Shown piece after piece: positions 51,920 through 63,904 of a stretch of 64,000 nucleotides of DNA. The notes beneath the pieces are model-generated. The model saw only the letters and a program-made list of their open reading frames with translations. It searched no databases and was not told the origin of the DNA. Each line of letters opens with the position of its first letter. The first letter of the stretch is position 1. The stretch spans positions 1 through 64,000 of IMG/VR virus record IMGVR_UViG_3300009034_000001; one strand, 5' to 3'. The position numbers were made by a program, and so were the translations under genes.

Positions 51920-52957
51920 TTAGTCTGGCAAAACAAGTGATTTGAATATGCGGTCATATACACCTACAACAGCGATCCCGTTGTCAACGCCAACTATTAC
52001 GCGTATCTCTTTAACTGTTGGAATAGTCCAGTCAAAATTTGTCACATCAGACCATGTTAGTCCAAAGTCGGTTGATCGTTTTAGCGTGCTGCCATAACCA
52101 CCAGCAAGCACAACGCCAAAATCAAGATAAGAAAGAGCGTAAAATCCACCTTCACCTACCGTAACACCAAGATCGGTCCATGTTGTTCCATAGTCGATTG
52201 ATCTCAATAATTTGATCGGATTTATTGTGGCAGCGATAACAATTCCACCTTCCACATACGTAAGCGCGTATATACGTTGTACTCCAGCTTGTTGACCAAG
52301 ATCGGTCCAAGTCGCACCGTAGTCGGTTGATCTCAGAATCTTGCCATTGAAACCCGTTCCGGCCAAAGTGATGCCATTCCCGAGATAACAAAATGAAAAG
52401 ATCTGAGTCTCGCCTGCTTGTTGACCAAGATCGGTCCAGGTCTTGCCATAGTCGGTTGACCTCAAGATTCTACCGCTCATTGTTTCACCGGTTCCAGCTA
52501 AGGCGATTCCTTTCTCAAGATAAGCAAGTGACGTAATGGGTTCCGCGACAGGTGAGCCAAGATCGGTCCAAGTCGCACCGTAGTCGGTTGACCTTAGAAT
52601 TTTGCCTGGGCCTTTACATCCCGCCAGCACAATACCATGCTCACAATAGGTCATTGAATCTGCTCCCACTGGTCCAGCTTGTTGACCAAGATTTGTCCAC
52701 GTTTGGCCATAGTCGGTTGACCTAAAGATCAGTCCCCCACCTATACCGGCAAGTACGACGCCTTTAGTACAATACGCAAGCGATATTATAAGATTGGTTG
52801 AAGATAAAACCCCACAATCCTTATATGCCTTACCTGCTAGAGCCCTATGGATCCAAGCTTCTCTAATCTCGACAAACAAGTTGCCAAGCTTGTAACCCCA
52901 AGGTGACTGCCAATCCATATTTAAACATTCTATAATACGTCTTGGAAGTTTTCTCAT
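51920..52957 (-). CDS. BNR/Asp-box repeat beta-propeller protein
   Basis: Six RS(T/I)D(Y/F)GxTW repeats at ~42-aa spacing, with near-identical DNA repeats. Confidence 0.88.
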   Translation of the reverse strand: MRKLPRRIIECLNMDWQSPWGYKLGNLFVEIREAWIHRALAGKAYKDCGVLSSTNLIISLAYCTKGVVLAGIGGGLIFRSTDYGQTWTNLGQQAGPVGADSMTYCEHGIVLAGCKGPGKILRSTDYGATWTDLGSPVAEPITSLAYLEKGIALAGTGETMSGRILRSTDYGKTWTDLGQQAGETQIFSFCYLGNGITLAGTGFNGKILRSTDYGATWTDLGQQAGVQRIYALTYVEGGIVIAATINPIKLLRSIDYGTTWTDLGVTVGEGGFYALSYLDFGVVLAGGYGSTLKRSTDFGLTWSDVTNFDWTIPTVKEIRVIVGVDNGIAVVGVYDRIFKSLVLPD

Positions 52958-53817: not shown

Positions 53818-54081
53818 TTATAAAACTTCCAGAGGCGTTTCCGGTTGAGGCTGACCATTCGCTATGGTGTTGGTTGCGCCACAATTGCGACAAACTCTTG
53901 ATACAACACCGTTGAGAACGGACACATACAAGTCCTTGTATTTTATGCGAAGTACCTTCTTCTCACGGTCCGTAAATCCCAAAATGGCCCTGCACTCCCT
54001 ACAACGCCATACCTGATCTTCAGGTAAGAGTGACTGTCCTTTTGACTTCTTTGTAGCCTTTCCAAAGTCTTGCTTTTTCAC
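53818..54081 (-). CDS. Mu Com-like zinc-ribbon protein
   Basis: WRCRECRAILG...VCRNCGATN. Confidence 0.65.
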   Translation of the reverse strand: MKKQDFGKATKKSKGQSLLPEDQVWRCRECRAILGFTDREKKVLRIKYKDLYVSVLNGVVSRVCRNCGATNTIANGQPQPETPLEVL

Positions 54082-54605: not shown

Positions 54606-54935
54606 TTACCTCTTATGTTTAGCGCCGAGCTCACTTTCAATGATTTTTTCTATATCATCTTCAACTAAAATCAATGCTCGAGTTATAAAATCGTTAGAAG
54701 ACATCTTCCGCGTTCCAAATACAACATATCCAACGTAGTGTACTTTGTCTTCATCCACTCCAATACGGGTGATGAGTTTAGAACCGTCTTGGACCGTCTC
54801 CCTCTCAACCTTTTTACGCATGTAACCCGAATCCACAGGGCACTCTTCTTCCATTTTCAACTCCAACATACCTGTTGCCTTCTCTGTAGCTTTTAACAAC
54901 CTTTTAATTACCGCCTTTTCAAACTTCTTAAACAT
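54606..54935 (-). CDS. HK97 gp10-like neck protein
   Basis: CPVDSG.M, Y..YV.FGTRKM...F...A. Confidence 0.85.
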   Translation of the reverse strand: MFKKFEKAVIKRLLKATEKATGMLELKMEEECPVDSGYMRKKVERETVQDGSKLITRIGVDEDKVHYVGYVVFGTRKMSSNDFITRALILVEDDIEKIIESELGAKHKR

Positions 54936-54947
54936 ATCTAACCACTA

Positions 54948-55514
54948 TTATATATTATGAATTCCGGATTTAACTATAAGGACCTTTGTTTCATAATGAT
55001 GCACTCCGTTTTTATCAAATCCCATATTAACCACCGACGCGGAATACATCTCCCCTTCAAACTCAATCACATCACCCGGTAATATCTCATCCCTAGACAT
55101 TATAACTCCATCTGCGGGAATAAACTCTCCTGCTTGTGTTAATATACGAGCCTTGTCTGACTTATAGAAAAATACCTTAATACTGTCAAAAACTTTCTGA
55201 CTATCCGGCTTTGTATGTCCTAGTCGATCAGCAGCTAAGATAGTCACAGTTAAACCACCAGTTACAACTTCATCAATATTGTCAAAATCCTTCGCTCCAA
55301 GTCTGGAGCCAGCTTTAGAAAAAACGAAGTCTTCCGTAACGGTAGCCCCAACGTTTTTAACTGTAATGGTGCCAGCACCAGAGGCTTTTACGGATAGTAA
55401 CTTACTTTCCGAAAAGGTTATGCCAAGTGGCGAAGCGCCATCTCCGGCGGGGCCGTAGGCTTGACTTGCGTCTCTATATACATCAATAGTATGCTTTAAC
55501 CAAGCATCAAACAT
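54948..55514 (-). CDS. Head closure-like protein
   Basis: Synteny; GD.I...G..Y and HHYE C-terminal motifs. Confidence 0.6.
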   Translation of the reverse strand: MFDAWLKHTIDVYRDASQAYGPAGDGASPLGITFSESKLLSVKASGAGTITVKNVGATVTEDFVFSKAGSRLGAKDFDNIDEVVTGGLTVTILAADRLGHTKPDSQKVFDSIKVFFYKSDKARILTQAGEFIPADGVIMSRDEILPGDVIEFEGEMYSASVVNMGFDKNGVHHYETKVLIVKSGIHNI

Positions 55515-55573: not shown

Positions 55574-55873
55574 TTATGGACAAACTAGTTGATTGATATA
55601 ACCACTTAGCTCTATTTCGGTCAACAGTGGACATGTGTGTTTGTCCATCAGTTCAATTTCAGCTGCATCAAGATCCGTACAGTTTTGGATCTTTGTGCCA
55701 AGTTTAACATGAGAACATGGTCCACAAGTACAATTGTCTAGTAACTCAACCTGTCTGTTAGTTAAACCCCCGCCAGTTCCAACATTCAAAAGGTTGCCCA
55801 TCTTACAATCTGAAAACACAGGACAACATCCAATATTTAAGAGTTCCTTTTCACGATCAGTAAGCGTTAACAT
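55574..55873 (-). CDS. Cys-rich triple-repeat head-region protein
   Basis: Three LT.xExELL...xCP....(K/E)LG..I units. Confidence 0.75.
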   Translation of the reverse strand: MLTLTDREKELLNIGCCPVFSDCKMGNLLNVGTGGGLTNRQVELLDNCTCGPCSHVKLGTKIQNCTDLDAAEIELMDKHTCPLLTEIELSGYINQLVCP

Positions 55874-55889
55874 CTAATTTACCGCCCCC

Positions 55890-56699
55890 TTAAATTACCT
55901 TCCTATAATATTTGAGGATTGTCAAAACCTCTTGTTCTTGTTCCTTAACGCTTTGAAGACTGTACGAATAACTCAAAATTCTTTCAGAAGATAATCCCTC
56001 ATTCTTCTTCTTGTTCCACAACATAGCCCCAATCTTTAAACAACTTATTCTCAAATCCTCCGGTAACGCAGTAAATCCAGCCTGATAGGTAATGTCAATT
56101 GGCGTTGCTTCGTTGGTTAGTGACGATTCAAATGAAACTAAACCAGTAGCCGGATCATACCATTCTACCTCAAAGACAGTTTCCGTAACCCTATGTTTCA
56201 CTGTTGGCGTGGTAACAATTGGATAGTTCTGAAGAAAGAAGTGTTTATGCGGACCTAATAGCTGAACTTCTGAATATGATTCAATATTAAACCTTCGCTT
56301 GCAAAAGGAACTTACAAAATCGGTCACGCCCTGTGTCAAAATATTTAGTATATACTCATTCCCGGAAACTGAAATCCCAATCCAATCTGCAAGTTCTTGG
56401 TTGTCAATATATCTCAGGTCATATGGATATTCAATTACCTTGAAGGATTTTGAACTGTTAGCAAAGACTTGATTGCCAGCTTTCAATCCACTGGCAATAG
56501 TGAAGAAGTTATAGCCAACTTTAAATTCAACAGGAGATGTATCAACCTGTGCTGTATATTCTGTTGCAGTAATTTTGGTAAGCGAAACCGTGCAAACTAG
56601 AGTGCGGGCAATATCAAAAACAGTAGCAAATGGACTTGAGGGTTCGTTTAGGAAAGAGAAATCAAGTAGGATATTTTGTCCCTTAACAACTTGTCGCAT
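55890..56699 (-). CDS. Head-tail connector (gp6-like) with N-terminal beta extension
   Basis: YI...EL, FC.R.F, ITY.AG...LPEDL..., E....YSYS, IL..YR. Confidence 0.8.
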   Translation of the reverse strand: MRQVVKGQNILLDFSFLNEPSSPFATVFDIARTLVCTVSLTKITATEYTAQVDTSPVEFKVGYNFFTIASGLKAGNQVFANSSKSFKVIEYPYDLRYIDNQELADWIGISVSGNEYILNILTQGVTDFVSSFCKRRFNIESYSEVQLLGPHKHFFLQNYPIVTTPTVKHRVTETVFEVEWYDPATGLVSFESSLTNEATPIDITYQAGFTALPEDLRISCLKIGAMLWNKKKNEGLSSERILSYSYSLQSVKEQEQEVLTILKYYRKVI

Positions 56700-56984: not shown

Positions 56985-57003
56985 AAAAGCCGGGACGCCC
57001 CGG
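56985..57003 (-). terminator. Intrinsic terminator after the major capsid gene
   Basis: CCGGG-GCGT-CCCGG followed by CTTTT. Confidence 0.5.
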
Positions 57004-57072: not shown

Positions 57073-58044
57073 TTAGGCAATCTTTACGTTGATTATCCTA
57101 ACAACAGCCTGAGGATCTCGGCTAACCATAGTTTCATCACAGAAGATGTCAAATGCATCAAACTGTGAAGAAGTCTTAGCCAATGGCTGTACTGTTAGTT
57201 TAGTCAACTCACCAACAAAGACCTTTGTAGTGTCAATCACAAAAAGCACAGTTGTGTCTCCACCAGTCATGCCTGTAATGTTGGTTCCATTGGAAGTCAA
57301 CACATTAGAAATGTTGCTGGACACATAGATAGGCACGTCATTGTAGGCAGGAAGTTTGAAACCTCCTTTAACCTCCGTAACGTTCACCCACCTCTGCAGT
57401 GATTGTAACAACCCAATGATCGATCTGCGACAAGACTTAGAGCAAATGACCATATCAGGATTGCCTCCCCGCAAAGTGTCAATGGCTTCGTCCAACTTTG
57501 CTCTTGTCAGAGCAACACCGCCCATGTCTATGGTAAGACCGGCAAGTGCATTTAAGCCGTCAAATGCCTTTGCGTTCTTTGCTGGTTCACTGGCGTTGGT
57601 GTAGTTACCCCAAATGTAAGCATAATCCTCCTTGTCCTTAAACTCCATGGTCTTGTTCTCAATTACCTGAGCAAGCAAGTTACCGAAAGTCTGGCCTACG
57701 GCCTGAGCCTTTCTTGTAACCTTACCCTGGCAACCAATTGTTCTGTATGGAAAAGCATACTGATCATAAGAACCAGTACTTTCCTCCAAATCTTCGATGT
57801 CGTTAACAAATACACACGGGGTTTCGGATGGAGTCTTTCTTACGAGGTACCAAGCATCACCGCTACCGGGTCTCCTTGGAAGGTTAACTCTCAACGGATT
57901 AAGATACTCAACTAATTCAGTTACAACACGATCAATCTGTGGCTGCATTTTGGCGAAATGACCAGACAGGCCTTCACCAGTTGCTGGCCAATCAGGCATC
58001 TTAACCGCACGGATGACCTCTCTCAAGTTCTCTTTTGGATCCAC
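57073..58044 (-). CDS. Major capsid protein (HK97 fold)
   Basis: Follows the protease/scaffold; 323 aa; FDGL, LDEAID, YNDVPI, PLAKT; perfect RBS. Confidence 0.88.
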   Translation of the reverse strand: MDPKENLREVIRAVKMPDWPATGEGLSGHFAKMQPQIDRVVTELVEYLNPLRVNLPRRPGSGDAWYLVRKTPSETPCVFVNDIEDLEESTGSYDQYAFPYRTIGCQGKVTRKAQAVGQTFGNLLAQVIENKTMEFKDKEDYAYIWGNYTNASEPAKNAKAFDGLNALAGLTIDMGGVALTRAKLDEAIDTLRGGNPDMVICSKSCRRSIIGLLQSLQRWVNVTEVKGGFKLPAYNDVPIYVSSNISNVLTSNGTNITGMTGGDTTVLFVIDTTKVFVGELTKLTVQPLAKTSSQFDAFDIFCDETMVSRDPQAVVRIINVKIA

Positions 58045-58099: not shown

Positions 58100-59797
58100 T
58101 TACTTAATCACCTGACAGAGCCTATTAAGCTTCTCAATCGGATTCATCTTCTGATAGTCAGCATCGTCTTCCAACCTAGGGATTTCCTCTTCCTTTTCAA
58201 CAAAAACACCTCGTTTAACAATGCCTTCAGAAAGAGTCTTGAGTAACCCAGCAACTTCATCCCACTGAGTAGTCAATCTTTCGATTTCATCAGCAACCCA
58301 GCCTCTTAGAGAATCGATATCCTCTTTCTTTGCTAGATCATCTGGGATGGCTTCAATTACTTCCTCTTCCTTAGGTTCCTCAGTCTTTTCCTCTTCCTTA
58401 GGTTCCTCTACTTTTTCCTCTTCCTTAGGTTCCTCTACTTTTTCCTCTTCCTTAGGTTCCTCAGCTTCACGTTTCTTTTCAGGAGCAGGATATGGATACT
58501 CACCAGCCAAAAGCGCGGACACCTTTTCTTTAATTTTCTGAATTATAGATTTTGCCTCTTCAGAGCCAACAACCTTAAGTAACCCATCAACCATTTTGAT
58601 TATACCCTTTAGCTGTTCCACTGTAGAAGCCTGTCTGTCAACTGCTTCAATCTTTTCTTCTTCCTTAGGTTCCTCGACTTCCTCGACTGGGATTGCACTA
58701 ATACCAAGCGCGTCTAGCTTGTCATTAAGAGCTTTCACCTGCTCAATCAATTCAGATGTTGATAAATCAATTTTCTCCTCCTTGGGTTCCTCGACTTTTT
58801 CCTCTTCCTTAGGTTCCTCGACTTTTTCCTCTTCCTTAGGTTCCTCGACTTTTTCCTCTTCAGGCTCGGTTATCCTCTTTACCTTTTTCCACTCTTTAGC
58901 ACACTCTGTCATGGATGTACCTTTTCCCATACACTCAGACATAAACTTTTGATAATCAGTCTTGGCTTGTGCAATAACTTCGTCAAGTCCTTCAAGAGGT
59001 TCTTCGCGCTCGACTTTTTCCTCTTCCTTAGGTTCCTCGACTTTTTCCTCTTCCTTAGGTTCCTCGCGTTCGATTACTTCCTCTTCTTTAGGCTCCTCAG
59101 TCTTTTCCTCTTCCTTCTTAGGTTCCTCTACTTTTTCCTCTTCCTTAGGTTCCTCAAGGGATTTCGACTTTTGGAGTACCTCCTTGACTTTCTTCACTTC
59201 CAAATCACCTCCTTCTTCAATAAGATCAAAATCTTCAACGAGATCCAACAATTCCTCTAATTGAGCATCTCGTTCAATCCACCAATCTATAATATCAGCC
59301 TGCCAAACACCAGGCACAGACACTAATGAACATTCTAACAGCAACAGTTTTGAAGCAACAGTAATCTGTTTGTTATATTCCTTACTCCACTTTGACTTCC
59401 TGTCAAGAATTTTACCACGGATTGAAAATTTAGAAATGACTCCTTCAGTGACCTTCTCCCAAATTTCCATCTCCGCGCATGAAATAAGAGCCTTAACCCA
59501 CAAGCCTTTTTCTCGAGCCTCAACTTCAATAACTCTGCCAATTGGTCTATCCGGATTGTGATTGAATAGCAATGTAGGACGATTTAACAGATCTTGAGCA
59601 GCTTCCTCCAGAGCCTCTTTCGTAATAATAATATCGTCAACCCCAAGATCAACAGTTGTCGCGAATCCTGACACAAACCACTTCGGCTTCTTTTCATCAT
59701 CAGGCTCCGCTTGTCTCTCAATTATATCAATTGGAAAAGTAAAACACTTTTCTCCATTACAAATCAGTTCAAAATCGTTTAACTGATCCAAAGACAT
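58100..59797 (-). CDS. HK97-type prohead protease fused to an EEPK-repeat scaffold
   Basis: GFATT.D, LLFNH, GLWV, FSIRG, ECSLV; acidic repeats. True start may be TTG 59791 by RBS spacing. Confidence 0.9.
   Translation of the reverse strand: MSLDQLNDFELICNGEKCFTFPIDIIERQAEPDDEKKPKWFVSGFATTVDLGVDDIIITKEALEEAAQDLLNRPTLLFNHNPDRPIGRVIEVEAREKGLWVKALISCAEMEIWEKVTEGVISKFSIRGKILDRKSKWSKEYNKQITVASKLLLLECSLVSVPGVWQADIIDWWIERDAQLEELLDLVEDFDLIEEGGDLEVKKVKEVLQKSKSLEEPKEEEKVEEPKKEEEKTEEPKEEEVIEREEPKEEEKVEEPKEEEKVEREEPLEGLDEVIAQAKTDYQKFMSECMGKGTSMTECAKEWKKVKRITEPEEEKVEEPKEEEKVEEPKEEEKVEEPKEEKIDLSTSELIEQVKALNDKLDALGISAIPVEEVEEPKEEEKIEAVDRQASTVEQLKGIIKMVDGLLKVVGSEEAKSIIQKIKEKVSALLAGEYPYPAPEKKREAEEPKEEEKVEEPKEEEKVEEPKEEEKTEEPKEEEVIEAIPDDLAKKEDIDSLRGWVADEIERLTTQWDEVAGLLKTLSEGIVKRGVFVEKEEEIPRLEDDADYQKMNPIEKLNRLCQVIK
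58360..59157 (-). repeat. ~27-bp EEPKEEEKV coding repeats in four blocks (13 EEPK units)
   Basis: Near-identical GAGGAACCTAAGGAAGAGGAAAA units. Confidence 0.9.
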
Positions 59798-61564: not shown

Positions 61565-63904
61565 TTAATCACCAATACATTCTTCAATCATATCGCCTAA
61601 TTGACATTCTGTAGCAAGAGGACATGTACCTTGATTAAGCAATTCTCTCTCTGCATCGGTAAGTTTAACTTTATTTTTGATTTTCTGCCCAAGTTTCATG
61701 TTGGCAACTACCGGACAACTACCACAATCGAGTTCTAAAGCAGAAGCATCTTTCAATTCGGCATCTCCATCCAGCATATCATCAACCACTAACATATTAG
61801 CAATTGGGCAACCTGTCATTTTATCCTTTTTCTTGTGTGCACCTGCTTTCTTAAAATCAGGAACAAAATCATATTCCTGACTGATTTCGTCCACGACAGG
61901 TGTAGAACCGGGTTCGAATGTACACTCCAACTTAAGCCAACGTCCAATTCGTCTCACATCAACGGGGAAAGTTTCGTGGTAACCGTCTTTTGGTGTCCAC
62001 TGTACTTTATCAAAGTTCTTCTGTAATTGCGTTGTCTTAACTCTAACCTTGAGATTGGAATTGCCTCGTTCCGTACCAGTCACATTTAGAGTACCCCAAC
62101 GAGTATATGGTTTATCCGCTTTAAATTCAACGGTCCAAGTACCGGTATTGAAGTTACCTTCTTCAGTAATTGGCTGATAGTTTGCACCTAAGCCGTAATG
62201 CCATCCGCCAAAGCTTAAACCAGCGCCCTGAATCCCAGCACCAGCTAGTTGGTATCTAGATACATTTAAGTCGCCAATGTACAACCACGAAGTACCATCA
62301 AATTCCTCCGTCCAATAATGATACTTCGCAAGATATTCATATCCTCCGAAAGCTAGACCTGCATTTTGAGTGCCACAACCGGCTAAGTACGCACGAGCAG
62401 CAATTAAATTACCTCCAGCCGACCAAGAAGTTCCGTCATACGTCTCCGTAGTATTCAAAATTTGAATAGCGATGTCGTCCCAACCACCAAAGCTTAAGCC
62501 TGCATTCTGAGTTCCGCAACCAGCTAGCCCATATCGAAATTTATTAAGGTTGTTGCTAGCAGTCCATACCGCACCATCATATTCTTCAGTGAAACCAACA
62601 CGTGCGGATACATAACCACCAAAGCTCAAACCTGCATTTTGTACACCGCAACCCGCGAGGGTCCAACGAGCTGTATTAAGATTGCCCCCTAAAGACCAAT
62701 TTGTACCATCATATTCTTCTGCGGGCTGGGCCGGCGCACCAATAGAATATCCGCCAAAAGCCAAGCCTGCATTCTGAGTTCCGCAACCAGCACAAGCTTC
62801 CCGAGCAACGTTTAAATTCCCGCCAGGCAACCAACCTGTTCCGTCATACTCTTCAGTTGTTACGGAACGACCAGTACTTTCGACGCCACCAAAACTCAAA
62901 CCTGCATTTTGTAGGCCACAGCCAGCAAGGCCTCGACGAGCTGTATTAAGGTTGCCTCCTAAAGTCCAAACGTGCATTCCTCTTAAACTACCTGCTAAAA
63001 TTGGTTCCAGACCGGTATGAGGAGCATATTCTTCAGTTGTTCCTAAAATATTCAGTGTCGCATCATCGTGACCACCAAAGGATAAACCAGCTTGTGTGGT
63101 ACCGCACCCGGCTAAAGATGAACGTGCAACATTGAGATTGACCGAGCTGGTCCAACTTGCGCCGTCATATTCCTCCGTGGTTCCCATCGGGCCATAACCA
63201 CCAAAGGAGAGACCGGCATTTTGTGTGCCACAGCCAGCTAATCTGTTTCGAGCAGTATTCAAACTTCCACCAAGAGACCAGGTTGCGCCATCGTATTCTT
63301 CCGTTGTTGCCAACCATGATCCACCAAAACTAAGCCCCGCGTTCTGACTACCGCAACCGGCTAATGAGTCACGTGGTTGATTTAGGCTGCCACCAACGGT
63401 CCAAGTTGCGCCGTTATATTCCTCCGTGGCTCCCGACAAAGTGGCGCCATCCCAACCGCCAAAGGAAAGACCTGCACTTTGAGTTCCAGCTCCAGCTAGA
63501 TATCCACGGCCAGTATTGAGATTACCACCTAGTGACCATACTGAGCCGTCGTATTCCTCGGATAATGGGGAAATGCCGTTTGTATATCCGCCAAAGGAAA
63601 GACCAGCGACTTGGGTGCCACAACCGGCTAGAAACCTTTTTTTGTTGTTTAAGTTACCGCCTACAGCCCAAGAAGCTCCATTATATTCTTCCGTGTCCTT
63701 CACAAGAGTATATGCTGGGTATTCTCCACCAAAGGAGAGACCGGCATTTTGTGTGCCACATCCTGCGAGCCACTTACGCGCTTTATTCAAATTGCCACCA
63801 AGTGTCCAACCACCAACTATGTAACCAGTAGCTTTAAAATCAAGGTTATTTAAAACACCCTCATTAAAGTCTTCAATTTCTGTCCAAGTTTTTGTTTGAA
63901 TCAT
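61565..63904 (-). CDS. Kelch-like double beta-propeller protein with C-terminal Cys-repeat domain
   Basis: 12 repeats W..GG.LN..R..LAGCG.Q.AGLSFGG...TEEY.G, arranged as 6+6. Confidence 0.88.
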   Translation of the reverse strand: MIQTKTWTEIEDFNEGVLNNLDFKATGYIVGGWTLGGNLNKARKWLAGCGTQNAGLSFGGEYPAYTLVKDTEEYNGASWAVGGNLNNKKRFLAGCGTQVAGLSFGGYTNGISPLSEEYDGSVWSLGGNLNTGRGYLAGAGTQSAGLSFGGWDGATLSGATEEYNGATWTVGGSLNQPRDSLAGCGSQNAGLSFGGSWLATTEEYDGATWSLGGSLNTARNRLAGCGTQNAGLSFGGYGPMGTTEEYDGASWTSSVNLNVARSSLAGCGTTQAGLSFGGHDDATLNILGTTEEYAPHTGLEPILAGSLRGMHVWTLGGNLNTARRGLAGCGLQNAGLSFGGVESTGRSVTTEEYDGTGWLPGGNLNVAREACAGCGTQNAGLAFGGYSIGAPAQPAEEYDGTNWSLGGNLNTARWTLAGCGVQNAGLSFGGYVSARVGFTEEYDGAVWTASNNLNKFRYGLAGCGTQNAGLSFGGWDDIAIQILNTTETYDGTSWSAGGNLIAARAYLAGCGTQNAGLAFGGYEYLAKYHYWTEEFDGTSWLYIGDLNVSRYQLAGAGIQGAGLSFGGWHYGLGANYQPITEEGNFNTGTWTVEFKADKPYTRWGTLNVTGTERGNSNLKVRVKTTQLQKNFDKVQWTPKDGYHETFPVDVRRIGRWLKLECTFEPGSTPVVDEISQEYDFVPDFKKAGAHKKKDKMTGCPIANMLVVDDMLDGDAELKDASALELDCGSCPVVANMKLGQKIKNKVKLTDAERELLNQGTCPLATECQLGDMIEECIGD

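What the first reader, a model, noticed from the sequence alone, without database searches (positions are those of the whole stretch)
55574..55873. Shared ~26-aa Cys motif links three virion-region proteins: candidate modular capsid-display anchor
Seen: this 99-aa protein is three copies of LTxxExELLxxxxCPxxxxxKLGxxI. The last ~85 aa of the Kelch protein (61565-61820) carry the same repeat (LTDAERELLNQGTCPLATECQLGDMI vs LTDREKELLNIGCCPVFSDCKMGNLL). The BNR propeller (52957) begins with one degenerate copy (LPRRIIECLN....P...KLGNL). Inference: the motif docks on three-fold capsid sites, with 3 copies acting as a single-chain pseudo-trimer and 1 copy trimerising. It would be used bare or carrying different propeller cargo, giving a plug-and-play head decoration system that may be metal- or disulfide-stabilised.
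Basis: partly seen in the sequence, partly recalled or inferred. Interest (0 to 1): 0.75.

Follow-up and report, generated by a model that had tools for sequence, protein, structure and literature searches.

The report
Orphan Cys-repeat module in jumbo phage
A small late gene of an uncultivated 241-kb marine or sediment phage encodes three cysteine-bearing helical repeats, and an old copy of that domain ends a large Kelch-propeller protein; the third claimed copy is not real, the domain occurs nowhere else in public data, and its proposed role as a capsid anchor remains untested.

Summary
The repeat is real, but it links two proteins, not three.

- **p99:** the 99-aa ORF (55574-55873, minus strand) holds three units of 31-33 aa, each with one invariant Cys.
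- **P0002:** residues 696-779 of the 779-aa Kelch-type propeller protein are a paralogue of the whole p99 domain (BLASTP 2e-10). Profiles built from one protein find only the other in the six-frame genome (1e-13 and 2e-15).
- **BNR protein:** its N-terminus is not a copy (-0.4 bits; shuffles do as well).
- **Age:** the duplication is old (third-codon identity 33%). The ORF has a good ribosome-binding site. A roughly 95%-identical marine variant shows 3 synonymous and 1 non-synonymous change.
- **Orphan status:** nothing similar was found among 1.84 billion representative proteins, GenBank phages, IMG/VR, metagenome or genome contigs, Pfam, PHROGs, NCBIfam or PDB. None of 193 related propeller ORFs carries it.
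- **Mosaic:** P0002 is built from three modules (propeller, beta-rich domain, Cys repeat), each with its own paralogue in this genome.

The fold could not be modelled with confidence (pLDDT 33-56, all-helical). My best guess is a Cys-cluster-stabilised helical docking module, at low confidence. Docking on capsid three-fold sites is neither supported nor excluded.

The parts
55574..55873 (-). p99 ORF (P0001, 99 aa; pI 4.6; 9 Cys): three tandem Cys-bearing helical units and nothing else
55787..55864 (-). p99 unit 1 (residues 4-29; Cys16, 17, 23)
55688..55765 (-). p99 unit 2 (residues 37-62; Cys48, 50, 53: C-x-C-x-x-C)
55595..55672 (-). p99 unit 3 (residues 68-93; Cys81)
55874..55889 (-). 16-nt spacer after the adaptor's stop codon, carrying a Shine-Dalgarno-like AAGGGGG. 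It reads AAGGAGGT in the ~95% marine variant.
61568..61819 (-). C-terminal Cys-repeat domain of P0002 (residues 696-779; Cys699, 727, 730, 761, 767, 776), a paralogue of the whole p99
61679..61756 (-). P0002 unit 2 (residues 717-742, C-x-x-C-P)
61586..61663 (-). P0002 unit 3 (residues 748-773), the copy closest to p99 unit 1 (46% identity, 82% positives)
61790..61819 (-). Partial, degenerate first unit of P0002 (residues 696-705, one Cys-Pro)
61820..61858 (-). Lys-rich linker (residues 683-695) between the body of P0002 and the Cys domain
   Evidence: sequence
61871..62143 (-). Beta-rich middle domain of P0002 (residues 588-678). Its paralogue is a 155-aa ORF at genome 95573-96040.
62144..63904 (-). 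N-terminal strand plus Kelch-type double propeller of P0002 (about 12 blades of ~48 aa). Its paralogue is a 651-aa ORF at genome 72418-74373.
52877..52948 (-). N-terminus of the BNR/Asp-box propeller protein: the claimed degenerate copy, rejected
55890..56699 (-). Head-tail adaptor gene directly upstream of p99 (context)
   Evidence: phrog_442, 7.9e-15
54948..55514 (-). 188-aa ORF directly downstream of p99, with no family match. The Neck1/tail-completion gene (54606-54935) follows it (context).

Best explanation
What it is (shown):
- A lineage-specific protein domain of about 85-99 aa, made of tandem 31-33-aa units.
- Each unit has one invariant Cys, followed by Pro in all but p99 unit 2.
- The domain is present twice in one uncultivated 241-kb phage. 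One copy is a free-standing late protein (p99), encoded between the head-tail adaptor and the next neck genes. The other is the C-terminal domain of a 779-aa mosaic protein (split beta-rich domain + Kelch double propeller + Lys-rich linker + Cys domain).
- The two copies diverged long ago, and both kept the motif.

How it most likely works (inferred):
- The units form short helix-loop-helix hairpins that pack into a small helical repeat.
- The loop cysteines come together. These are one per unit plus the extra C-x-C or C-x-x-C of the middle unit, so four thiols are conserved in kind in both proteins. They would lock the fold through a bound metal or through disulfides.
- The folded domain would be a protein-protein docking module. 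p99 is made with the head-completion proteins and would bind a virion or assembly partner. The same module on P0002 would tether a lectin-like propeller to that partner.
- A variant follows domain-fusion ('Rosetta stone') logic: free p99 would be the adaptor that recruits the unfused propeller or beta-domain paralogues.
- Which partner is bound (capsid, neck or another protein) is unknown.
For: - Repeat and paralogy statistics.
- Old duplication with the motif retained: 30% aa identity, third-codon identity 33%, and only 10 of 27 identical residues use the same codon.
- Real gene: a Shine-Dalgarno-like sequence 16 nt after the adaptor's stop. The ORF is kept in a ~95% marine variant with 3 synonymous changes and 1 non-synonymous change at a variable position, and a more canonical SD.
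- Late or structural context: MCP, protease-scaffold, adaptor and Neck1 lie around it. No promoter- or terminator-like site sits next to it.
- Cys enrichment: 9.1% and 7.1% against a genome median of 1.9% and a 95th percentile of 4.0%. One Cys column is invariant in all 6 units.
- All-helical predictions: AF2 gives helices in each unit, with pLDDT 65-74 for residues 41-80. The ESM-Atlas model's nearest neighbours are helical-repeat proteins such as PCI and TPR-like, TM about 0.5.
- Tether-like architecture: a terminal domain behind a Lys-rich linker. Related propeller ORFs (193 in 79 IMG/VR loci) have no such extension. The module is therefore an add-on, not part of the propeller.
- All three modules of P0002 also exist as separate genes in the genome.
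Against: - There is no direct evidence of binding, of metal, or of virion location.
- Both structure predictions are low-confidence (pLDDT 56 and about 33 for the domain).
- No homologues exist, so there is no co-occurrence or covariation evidence.
- The P0002 gene adjoins sugar-nucleotide and glycosyltransferase genes rather than head genes, so it need not be a virion protein.
- Small orphan ORFs inside neck cassettes can be non-structural.
- Only one Cys per unit is strictly conserved. The other Cys positions differ between the paralogues.
Confidence: 0.35

Rival explanations
1. Non-structural Cys-cluster domain. The module would be a small metal- or redox-active or ligand-binding domain with no role in the particle. 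p99 would be an accessory (moron-like) protein that merely sits in the neck cassette. P0002 would be a soluble or cell-directed lectin-like protein belonging to the glycan-enzyme island.
For: - P0002 lies next to epimerase, UDP-glucose dehydrogenase, methyltransferase and glycosyltransferase genes, and to a second Kelch paralogue.
- p99 has no PHROG or Pfam structural match.
- Cys richness and the Cys-Pro signature are typical of cofactor ligands (the link to cofactor ligands is my own knowledge).
Against: - p99 is packed 16 nt behind the adaptor gene with no promoter- or terminator-like site next to it.
- Its GC and GC3 match its neighbours.
- A terminal domain behind a flexible linker fits a tether better than a catalytic site.
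Confidence: 0.25
2. Homotypic pairing. p99 would be built into the head-tail junction, and the paralogous tail of P0002 would dock onto p99 itself (like binds like), rather than both competing for a third partner.
For: The two are paralogous helical-repeat domains, and p99 is encoded among neck genes. Repeat domains often self-associate (own knowledge).
Against: No computational support. This was the only pairing tested. Co-folding of p99 + Zn + P0002(685-779) gave no answer, which counts neither for nor against.
Confidence: 0.1
3. The motif would dock on capsid three-fold sites, with three units acting as a single-chain pseudo-trimer and one unit (BNR protein) trimerising. This would give a three-member plug-and-play head decoration system.
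For: - p99 has three units.
- Decoration proteins made of a small helical capsid-binding domain plus exposed cargo are known: pb10, Hoc and SPP1 gp12 (PMC5292684, read).
Against: - The BNR copy is not real.
- The P0002 domain has 2 full units plus a fragment, not 3 equal ones.
- p99 is not adjacent to the MCP gene. It follows the adaptor.
- Nothing addresses three-fold sites.
Confidence: 0.05
4. Chance similarity or a non-functional leftover of a partial gene duplication (p99 not expressed).
For: p99 is a short orphan ORF with no homologues outside this phage.
Against: - The similarity is significant and reciprocal within the whole genome.
- Synonymous sites are saturated, yet the motif and the open frame are kept.
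- The ribosome-binding site is good and improves in the variant, where most changes are synonymous.
Confidence: 0.04
5. The loop cysteines would be acceptor sites for a modification made by the phage's own glycan machinery (for example S-linked glycosylation of a helix-loop-helix, as in glycocin-type peptides), rather than metal ligands.
For: Only circumstantial. There is an invariant loop Cys between two short helices. A large glycosyltransferase and sugar-nucleotide island adjoins P0002. The comparison with glycocins is from my own knowledge, not a test.
Against: There is no similarity to any known glycocin or its transferase. p99 is encoded far from the island.
Confidence: 0.03

Closest known systems
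Two-domain capsid decoration proteins with a small alpha-helical anchor: T5 pb10, T4 Hoc, SPP1 gp12 (PMC5292684; review PMC7602432, listed, not read)
   Same: A small helical domain at one end, with an exposed, probably ligand-binding cargo (Ig-like domains there, a Kelch propeller here). Dispensable-looking accessory genes of the late region.
   Different: - No sequence similarity (Pfam and PHROGs found nothing).
- The anchor here is a Cys-bearing tandem repeat.
- It also exists as a bare, cargo-less protein.
- Capsid binding is not shown.
- p99 lies after the adaptor gene, not next to the MCP gene.
Dockerin modules of cellulosomal enzymes (own knowledge)
   Same: A terminal module of about 70-100 aa behind a linker, built from internally duplicated helix-loop-helix segments whose loops carry the stabilising ligands. 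It serves purely to plug varied cargo into a scaffold.
   Different: Dockerins use Asp/Asn calcium loops and 22-aa segments. Here the units are 31-33 aa with Cys. There was no Pfam match at E up to 10, and no cohesin-like partner is known.
Shared anchor domains of phage tailspikes and tail fibres (own knowledge)
   Same: The same short docking module sits on different proteins of one phage, so that they can share an attachment point.
   Different: Those modules are N-terminal, widespread and recognisable by sequence. This one is C-terminal, an orphan, and shared with a cargo-less protein.
Kelch-type beta-propellers (the body of P0002 only)
   Same: Blades of about 48 aa with the GG...Y-D...W...R signature. 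phmmer matches to solved Kelch propellers: 8pjx at 5.6e-13 and 9tsn at 7.5e-4.
   Different: No Pfam Kelch model matches, even at E up to 10. It belongs to phrog_27227, of unknown function.

Membership tests
The Cys-repeat family defined here (p99 units) | Significant match to a profile of the p99 units (L-T-x-x-E-x-E-L-L ... C-P ... K-L-G-x-x-I), in tandem copies | tested here: met
   P0002 residues 696-779: E 1.2e-13 with the profile built from p99 only. Reverse search 1.7e-15. BLASTP 2e-10.
The Cys-repeat family defined here (p99 units) | The same match for the N-terminus of the BNR propeller protein | tested here: not met
   Not listed at E up to 100. Score -0.4 bits, with 52 of 1000 shuffles as good. 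Pairwise p 0.05-0.42.
Phage capsid decoration proteins (pb10, Hoc, Soc, gpD, Dec types) | Sequence membership in a known decoration-protein family | tested here: not met
   No Pfam, PHROG or NCBIfam family for p99 or P0002 585-779. No PDB sequence match at E up to 10.
Phage capsid decoration proteins (pb10, Hoc, Soc, gpD, Dec types) | Physical presence on the outside of the mature capsid | not testable with these tools
   The phage is uncultivated, and no proteome or map exists. MCP oligomer plus p99 exceeds the co-folding size limit.
Dockerin | Match to the dockerin profile and a duplicated Asp/Asn calcium-binding loop | tested here: not met
   No Pfam hit at E up to 10. The loops carry Cys-Pro, not D-x-D-x-D.
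LuxR/GerE or sigma-70 region-4 helix-turn-helix (considered because of L-T-x-R-E-x-E-L-L) | Match to the HTH profiles, including the recognition helix | tested here: not met
   No Pfam hit at E up to 10. The unit is too short (31-33 aa) to hold a third helix.
Zinc-ribbon or zinc-finger domains | Two paired Cys/His knuckles and a bound metal | tested here: inconclusive
   Only the middle unit has C-x-C or C-x-x-C. The other units give one Cys each. Metal content is not testable. The co-fold with Zn gave pLDDT 35-40.
Kelch-repeat propeller (body of P0002) | Match to the Pfam Kelch models | tested here: not met
   No Pfam family at E up to 10 for residues 1-600 except a chance ACAS_N hit.
Kelch-repeat propeller (body of P0002) | Sequence similarity to solved Kelch propellers and the blade signature | tested here: met
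   8pjx (designed Kelch, 5.6e-13), 9tsn (Kelch protein, 7.5e-4), and many KEAP1 chains at E about 0.1. About 12 periodic blades are visible in the sequence.
BNR/Asp-box propeller (the 345-aa protein) | Repeated Asp-box motifs | tested here: met
   PF15899 at 2.1e-16, PF02012 at 4.5e-10, Sortilin-Vps10 at 7.1e-12.

The most novel reading that the evidence does not exclude
The Cys repeat would be a previously unseen, metal- or disulfide-locked docking module. One jumbo-phage lineage would use it as a universal plug. The bare form (p99) would occupy or create the sites on the head or neck. A fused form (P0002) would hang a glycan-binding Kelch propeller on the particle. That would be a dockerin-like system on a virion, assembled by intragenomic shuffling of three modules.
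Probability: 0.15. Interest if true: 0.6.

Novelty: new variant of a known kind. Interest (0 to 1): 0.3.

Why it matters
- **If it is a self-contained anchor:** an 85-99-aa tag that carries a 600-aa propeller onto a phage particle would be useful for phage display. It would also be an example of how jumbo phages build surface adhesins by shuffling their own modules.
- **As it stands:** this is a clean case of an orphan domain that is demonstrably under selection, because two ancient paralogues keep the motif.
- **Limits:** the phage is uncultivated and has no relatives in public data. That limits both the significance and the ways of testing it.

Tried and rejected
**Searches for homologues, all empty**
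- Word-indexed search of 5.8 billion proteins with p99, and with P0002 residues 600-779: only p99 itself, then nothing.
- tblastn of p99 against 50,697 GenBank phage records at E up to 10: no match.
- IMG/VR pattern scans: only the same phage, as a 173-kb contig.
- JGI metagenome and GTDB genome contigs: none. The repeat alignment A2 was too variable for a pattern scan.
- Full HMMER scan of 1.84 billion representatives with the 6-unit profile: only p99, plus four spurious low-complexity tandem-repeat translations.
- P0002 itself was not returned by that scan. It is presumably hidden behind a representative at least 50% identical that lacks the tail. Fusions onto abundant families can therefore be missed.
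- That blind spot was partly covered by scanning 79 IMG/VR loci holding 193 related propeller ORFs. None has the motif or any long C-terminal extension.
- Distant MCP relatives (27% identity) have no p99-like ORF.
- The adaptor protein also has no relatives, so the phage as a whole is isolated. The absence of p99 homologues is not special to p99.

**Family libraries**
- Pfam, PHROGs, NCBIfam, PADLOC and PDB sequences gave nothing for the domain.

**Structure**
- AF2 of p99 gave pLDDT 56. AF2 of P0002 585-779 gave pLDDT 45, and about 33 for the Cys domain.
- The ESM Atlas gave no feature hits, only generic helical-repeat neighbours.
- The models were too poor for a fold search, so none was run.

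**Complex**
- p99 + 2 Zn + P0002(685-779) gave no answer (score 0.00, own folds uncertain). This is evidence neither for nor against binding.

**Other**
- No DNA-level tandem repeat in p99, and no promoter- or terminator-like site next to it.
- The GenBank-phage tblastn of the propeller found nothing. No annotated or proteomically verified relative of P0002 was therefore available.

Full report
**Setting**

The window is the first 64 kb of a single 241,415-bp viral contig. CheckV rates it 98% complete, and IMG/VR classes it as linear. All genes in the window run on the minus strand. A 173-kb IMG/VR contig is the same phage. Fragments identical to it occur in two sediment metagenomes. A variant about 95% identical occurs in marine metagenomes.

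**Gene context**

Reading along the minus strand, the gene order around the finding is:
- P0002, 779 aa (61565-63904)
- a metallophosphatase-like protein (phrog_284)
- a 103-aa ORF
- the prohead protease/scaffold (58100-59797)
- an SU10-type major capsid protein (57073-58044)
- a 71-aa ORF
- the head-tail adaptor (55890-56699)
- p99 (55574-55873)
- a 188-aa orphan
- Neck1/tail completion (54606-54935)
- a 125-aa ORF and several small ORFs
- a BNR/Asp-box propeller (51920-52957)
- tail genes, including a 2150-aa ORF

**The observation**

p99 is three tandem units with periods of 33 and 31 aa. The units are similar to each other beyond shuffled controls, with p 0.002-0.006 per pair.

The last 84 residues of P0002 align with p99 residues 21-97 at 35% identity, BLASTP E 2e-10. 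A profile built only from the p99 units picks out P0002, and nothing else, from all 4032 six-frame segments of the genome (E 1.2e-13). The reverse search gives 1.7e-15.

The P0002 domain has two full units and a fragment of a first one. One Cys column is invariant in all six units, and Pro follows it in five of them.

The BNR N-terminus is not a copy. It has no BLAST alignment there and appears in no profile hit list. Its shuffle p is 0.05-0.42. It scores -0.4 bits, and 52 of 1000 shuffles do as well.

**Is p99 a real gene?**

- Its ATG lies 16 nt after the adaptor's stop, behind AAGGGGG.
- No promoter- or terminator-like site sits next to it.
- Its GC and GC3 match its neighbours.
- In the marine variant, codons 1-29 carry three synonymous changes and one non-synonymous change (I14S, at a variable position). 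Two changes in the spacer turn the ribosome-binding site into AAGGAGGT.
- The adaptor shows a similar pattern, 7 synonymous and 2 non-synonymous changes.
- Between p99 and the P0002 tail, third-codon identity is 33%. Only 10 of 27 identical residues share a codon. The duplication is therefore old, and the motif has been held by selection in both copies.

**Orphan status**

No relative was found in any of these searches:
- the 5.8-billion-protein index
- GenBank phages
- IMG/VR
- metagenome and genome contigs
- 1.84 billion representatives read in full with the unit profile; the four weak hits are low-complexity tandem-repeat translations

Pfam, PHROGs, NCBIfam, PADLOC and PDB sequences are silent.

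The propeller part of P0002 does have many relatives in IMG/VR: 206 matching stretches, of which 79 loci other than this phage's own were examined. Their 193 propeller ORFs are about 320 or 610 aa, end within 0-63 residues of the last blade, and lack the motif in the fetched flanks.

The adaptor of this phage also has no relatives. The only MCP relatives are 27% identical and have no p99-like gene. The lineage as a whole is unsampled.

**P0002 is a mosaic**

- **Propeller.** It is Kelch-type by similarity to solved Kelch propellers (8pjx at 5.6e-13, 9tsn at 7.5e-4), although no Pfam Kelch model matches. It is 51% identical to a 651-aa paralogue at genome 72418-74373.
- **Beta-rich domain.** Residues 588-678 are predicted beta-rich. 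They are homologous to a 155-aa ORF at genome 95573-96040, BLASTP 5e-12. That ORF, P0002 and the 651-aa paralogue all begin with nearly the same T-K-T-W-T...D-F strand. This suggests one beta domain into which the propellers are inserted (inference).
- **Linker and Cys domain.** These follow after residue 682.

Each of the three modules thus has its own paralogue in this genome (the beta domain and the Cys repeat as stand-alone ORFs), and neither the beta domain nor the Cys domain is found in the IMG/VR relatives. The simplest history is fusion of copies of three resident modules (inference).

**Where the P0002 gene sits**

The large terminase (genome 102918-104339) and a 1233-aa portal (99203-102904) lie about 40 kb upstream. 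Between them and P0002 is an island with nucleotide-sugar epimerases, UDP-glucose dehydrogenase, a methyltransferase, glycosyltransferases and the second Kelch protein. P0002 is at the island's edge, three genes from the protease. Calling it a 'virion-region protein' is reasonable but unproven.

In two IMG/VR contigs (L055, L062), arrays of related propeller genes lie next to 2OG-Fe(II) oxygenase genes. In L055 they also follow a protein with tail-fibre/tailspike-like similarity.

**Fold and mechanism**

AF2 predicts two to three short helices per unit, but with pLDDT 56 overall and 65-74 for residues 41-80. The P0002 tail is not modelled (pLDDT about 33). The ESM-Atlas models have only generic helical-repeat neighbours.

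Both domains are acidic (pI 4.6 and 4.2) and Cys-rich: 9 of 99 and 6 of 84 residues, against a genome median of 1.9%. In both, the middle unit adds a second Cys two or three residues before the invariant one. Four thiols are therefore conserved in kind.

From this I infer a small helical repeat whose loops meet at a metal site or a disulfide cluster. From the linker-plus-terminal-domain architecture I infer a docking role. Neither inference is demonstrated. Co-folding p99, zinc and the P0002 tail gave no answer, which is not evidence either way.

**Comparison with what is known**

It would work most like the small alpha-helical anchors of pb10, Hoc and SPP1 gp12 (PMC5292684), or like dockerins (own knowledge). 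It is a member of none of these families, because every sequence test failed.

What differs is the Cys-bearing tandem-repeat construction, the existence of a cargo-less paralogue in the neck cassette, and confinement to one lineage.

**Verdict**

This is a real, selected, orphan two-member domain family. The three-protein link and the pseudo-trimer argument do not hold. The anchor idea remains a reasonable but untested hypothesis. Interest is modest.

Noticed in passing
window 61565-63904; genome 72418-74373 (L083:8418-10373) and 95573-96040 (L084:9573-10040): P0002 is a three-module mosaic. The propeller, the beta-rich domain and the Cys repeat each have their own paralogue in the genome. P0002, the 651-aa paralogue and the 155-aa ORF share an almost identical N-terminal T-K-T-W-T...D-F strand, as if the propellers were inserted into one beta domain.
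   Followed up: partly
L084:9573-10040 (155-aa ORF), residues 27-55: A Cys-less stretch weakly resembles the last P0002 unit, including its terminal E-E-C-I-G-D (here E-E-W-I-G-D). Shuffle p is 0.0014 against that unit only, with no similarity to the other units. It may be a decayed copy or chance.
   Followed up: partly
genome about 64000-99000 (L083, L084): An island of about 40 kb lies between the portal/terminase genes and the protease/MCP genes. It holds nucleotide-sugar epimerases, UDP-glucose dehydrogenase, a methyltransferase, glycosyltransferases, a 629-aa protein matching both glycosyltransferase (4e-12) and radical-SAM (4e-05) PHROGs, and Kelch propellers. It is a possible glycan-synthesis or virion-glycosylation module splitting the head genes.
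   Followed up: partly
genome 99203-102904 (L084:13203-16904): The portal-like protein is 1233 aa. The stronger portal match (phrog_12, 1e-08) covers residues 6-243 and a weak one (phrog_2662, 2.8e-05) covers 613-669. The rest has no match.
   Followed up: no
window 58100-59797 (-): The prohead protease (S78-like N-terminus) is fused to a long scaffold-like region. That region is full of near-identical acidic E-E-P-K-E-E-E-K-V repeats.
   Followed up: no
window 53818-54081 (-): An 87-aa ORF with two C-x-x-C pairs (weak zinc-ribbon-type matches, E 0.006-0.03) sits among small ORFs between the neck genes and the BNR propeller.
   Followed up: no
L004-L082 (IMG/VR contigs), e.g. L055:2348-7350, L062:3899-6800: Relatives of the Kelch-type propeller (phrog_27227) occur as tandem arrays of two or three paralogous genes of about 320 and 610 aa. 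In L055 and L062 they sit next to 2OG-Fe(II) oxygenase genes, and in L055 also after a tail-fibre/tailspike-like protein. No relative was found in GenBank phage records.
   Followed up: partly
window 55884 and 55887: In the ~95% marine variant, two substitutions in the 16-nt spacer convert p99's ribosome-binding site from AAGGGGGCGG to AAGGAGGTGG, which is closer to the consensus.
   Followed up: yes
window 56990-57003: A GC-rich hairpin (CCGGG-ACGC-CCCGG) lies just downstream of the MCP gene. It is terminator-like on both strands and may be an attenuator setting the MCP-to-neck protein ratio.
   Followed up: no
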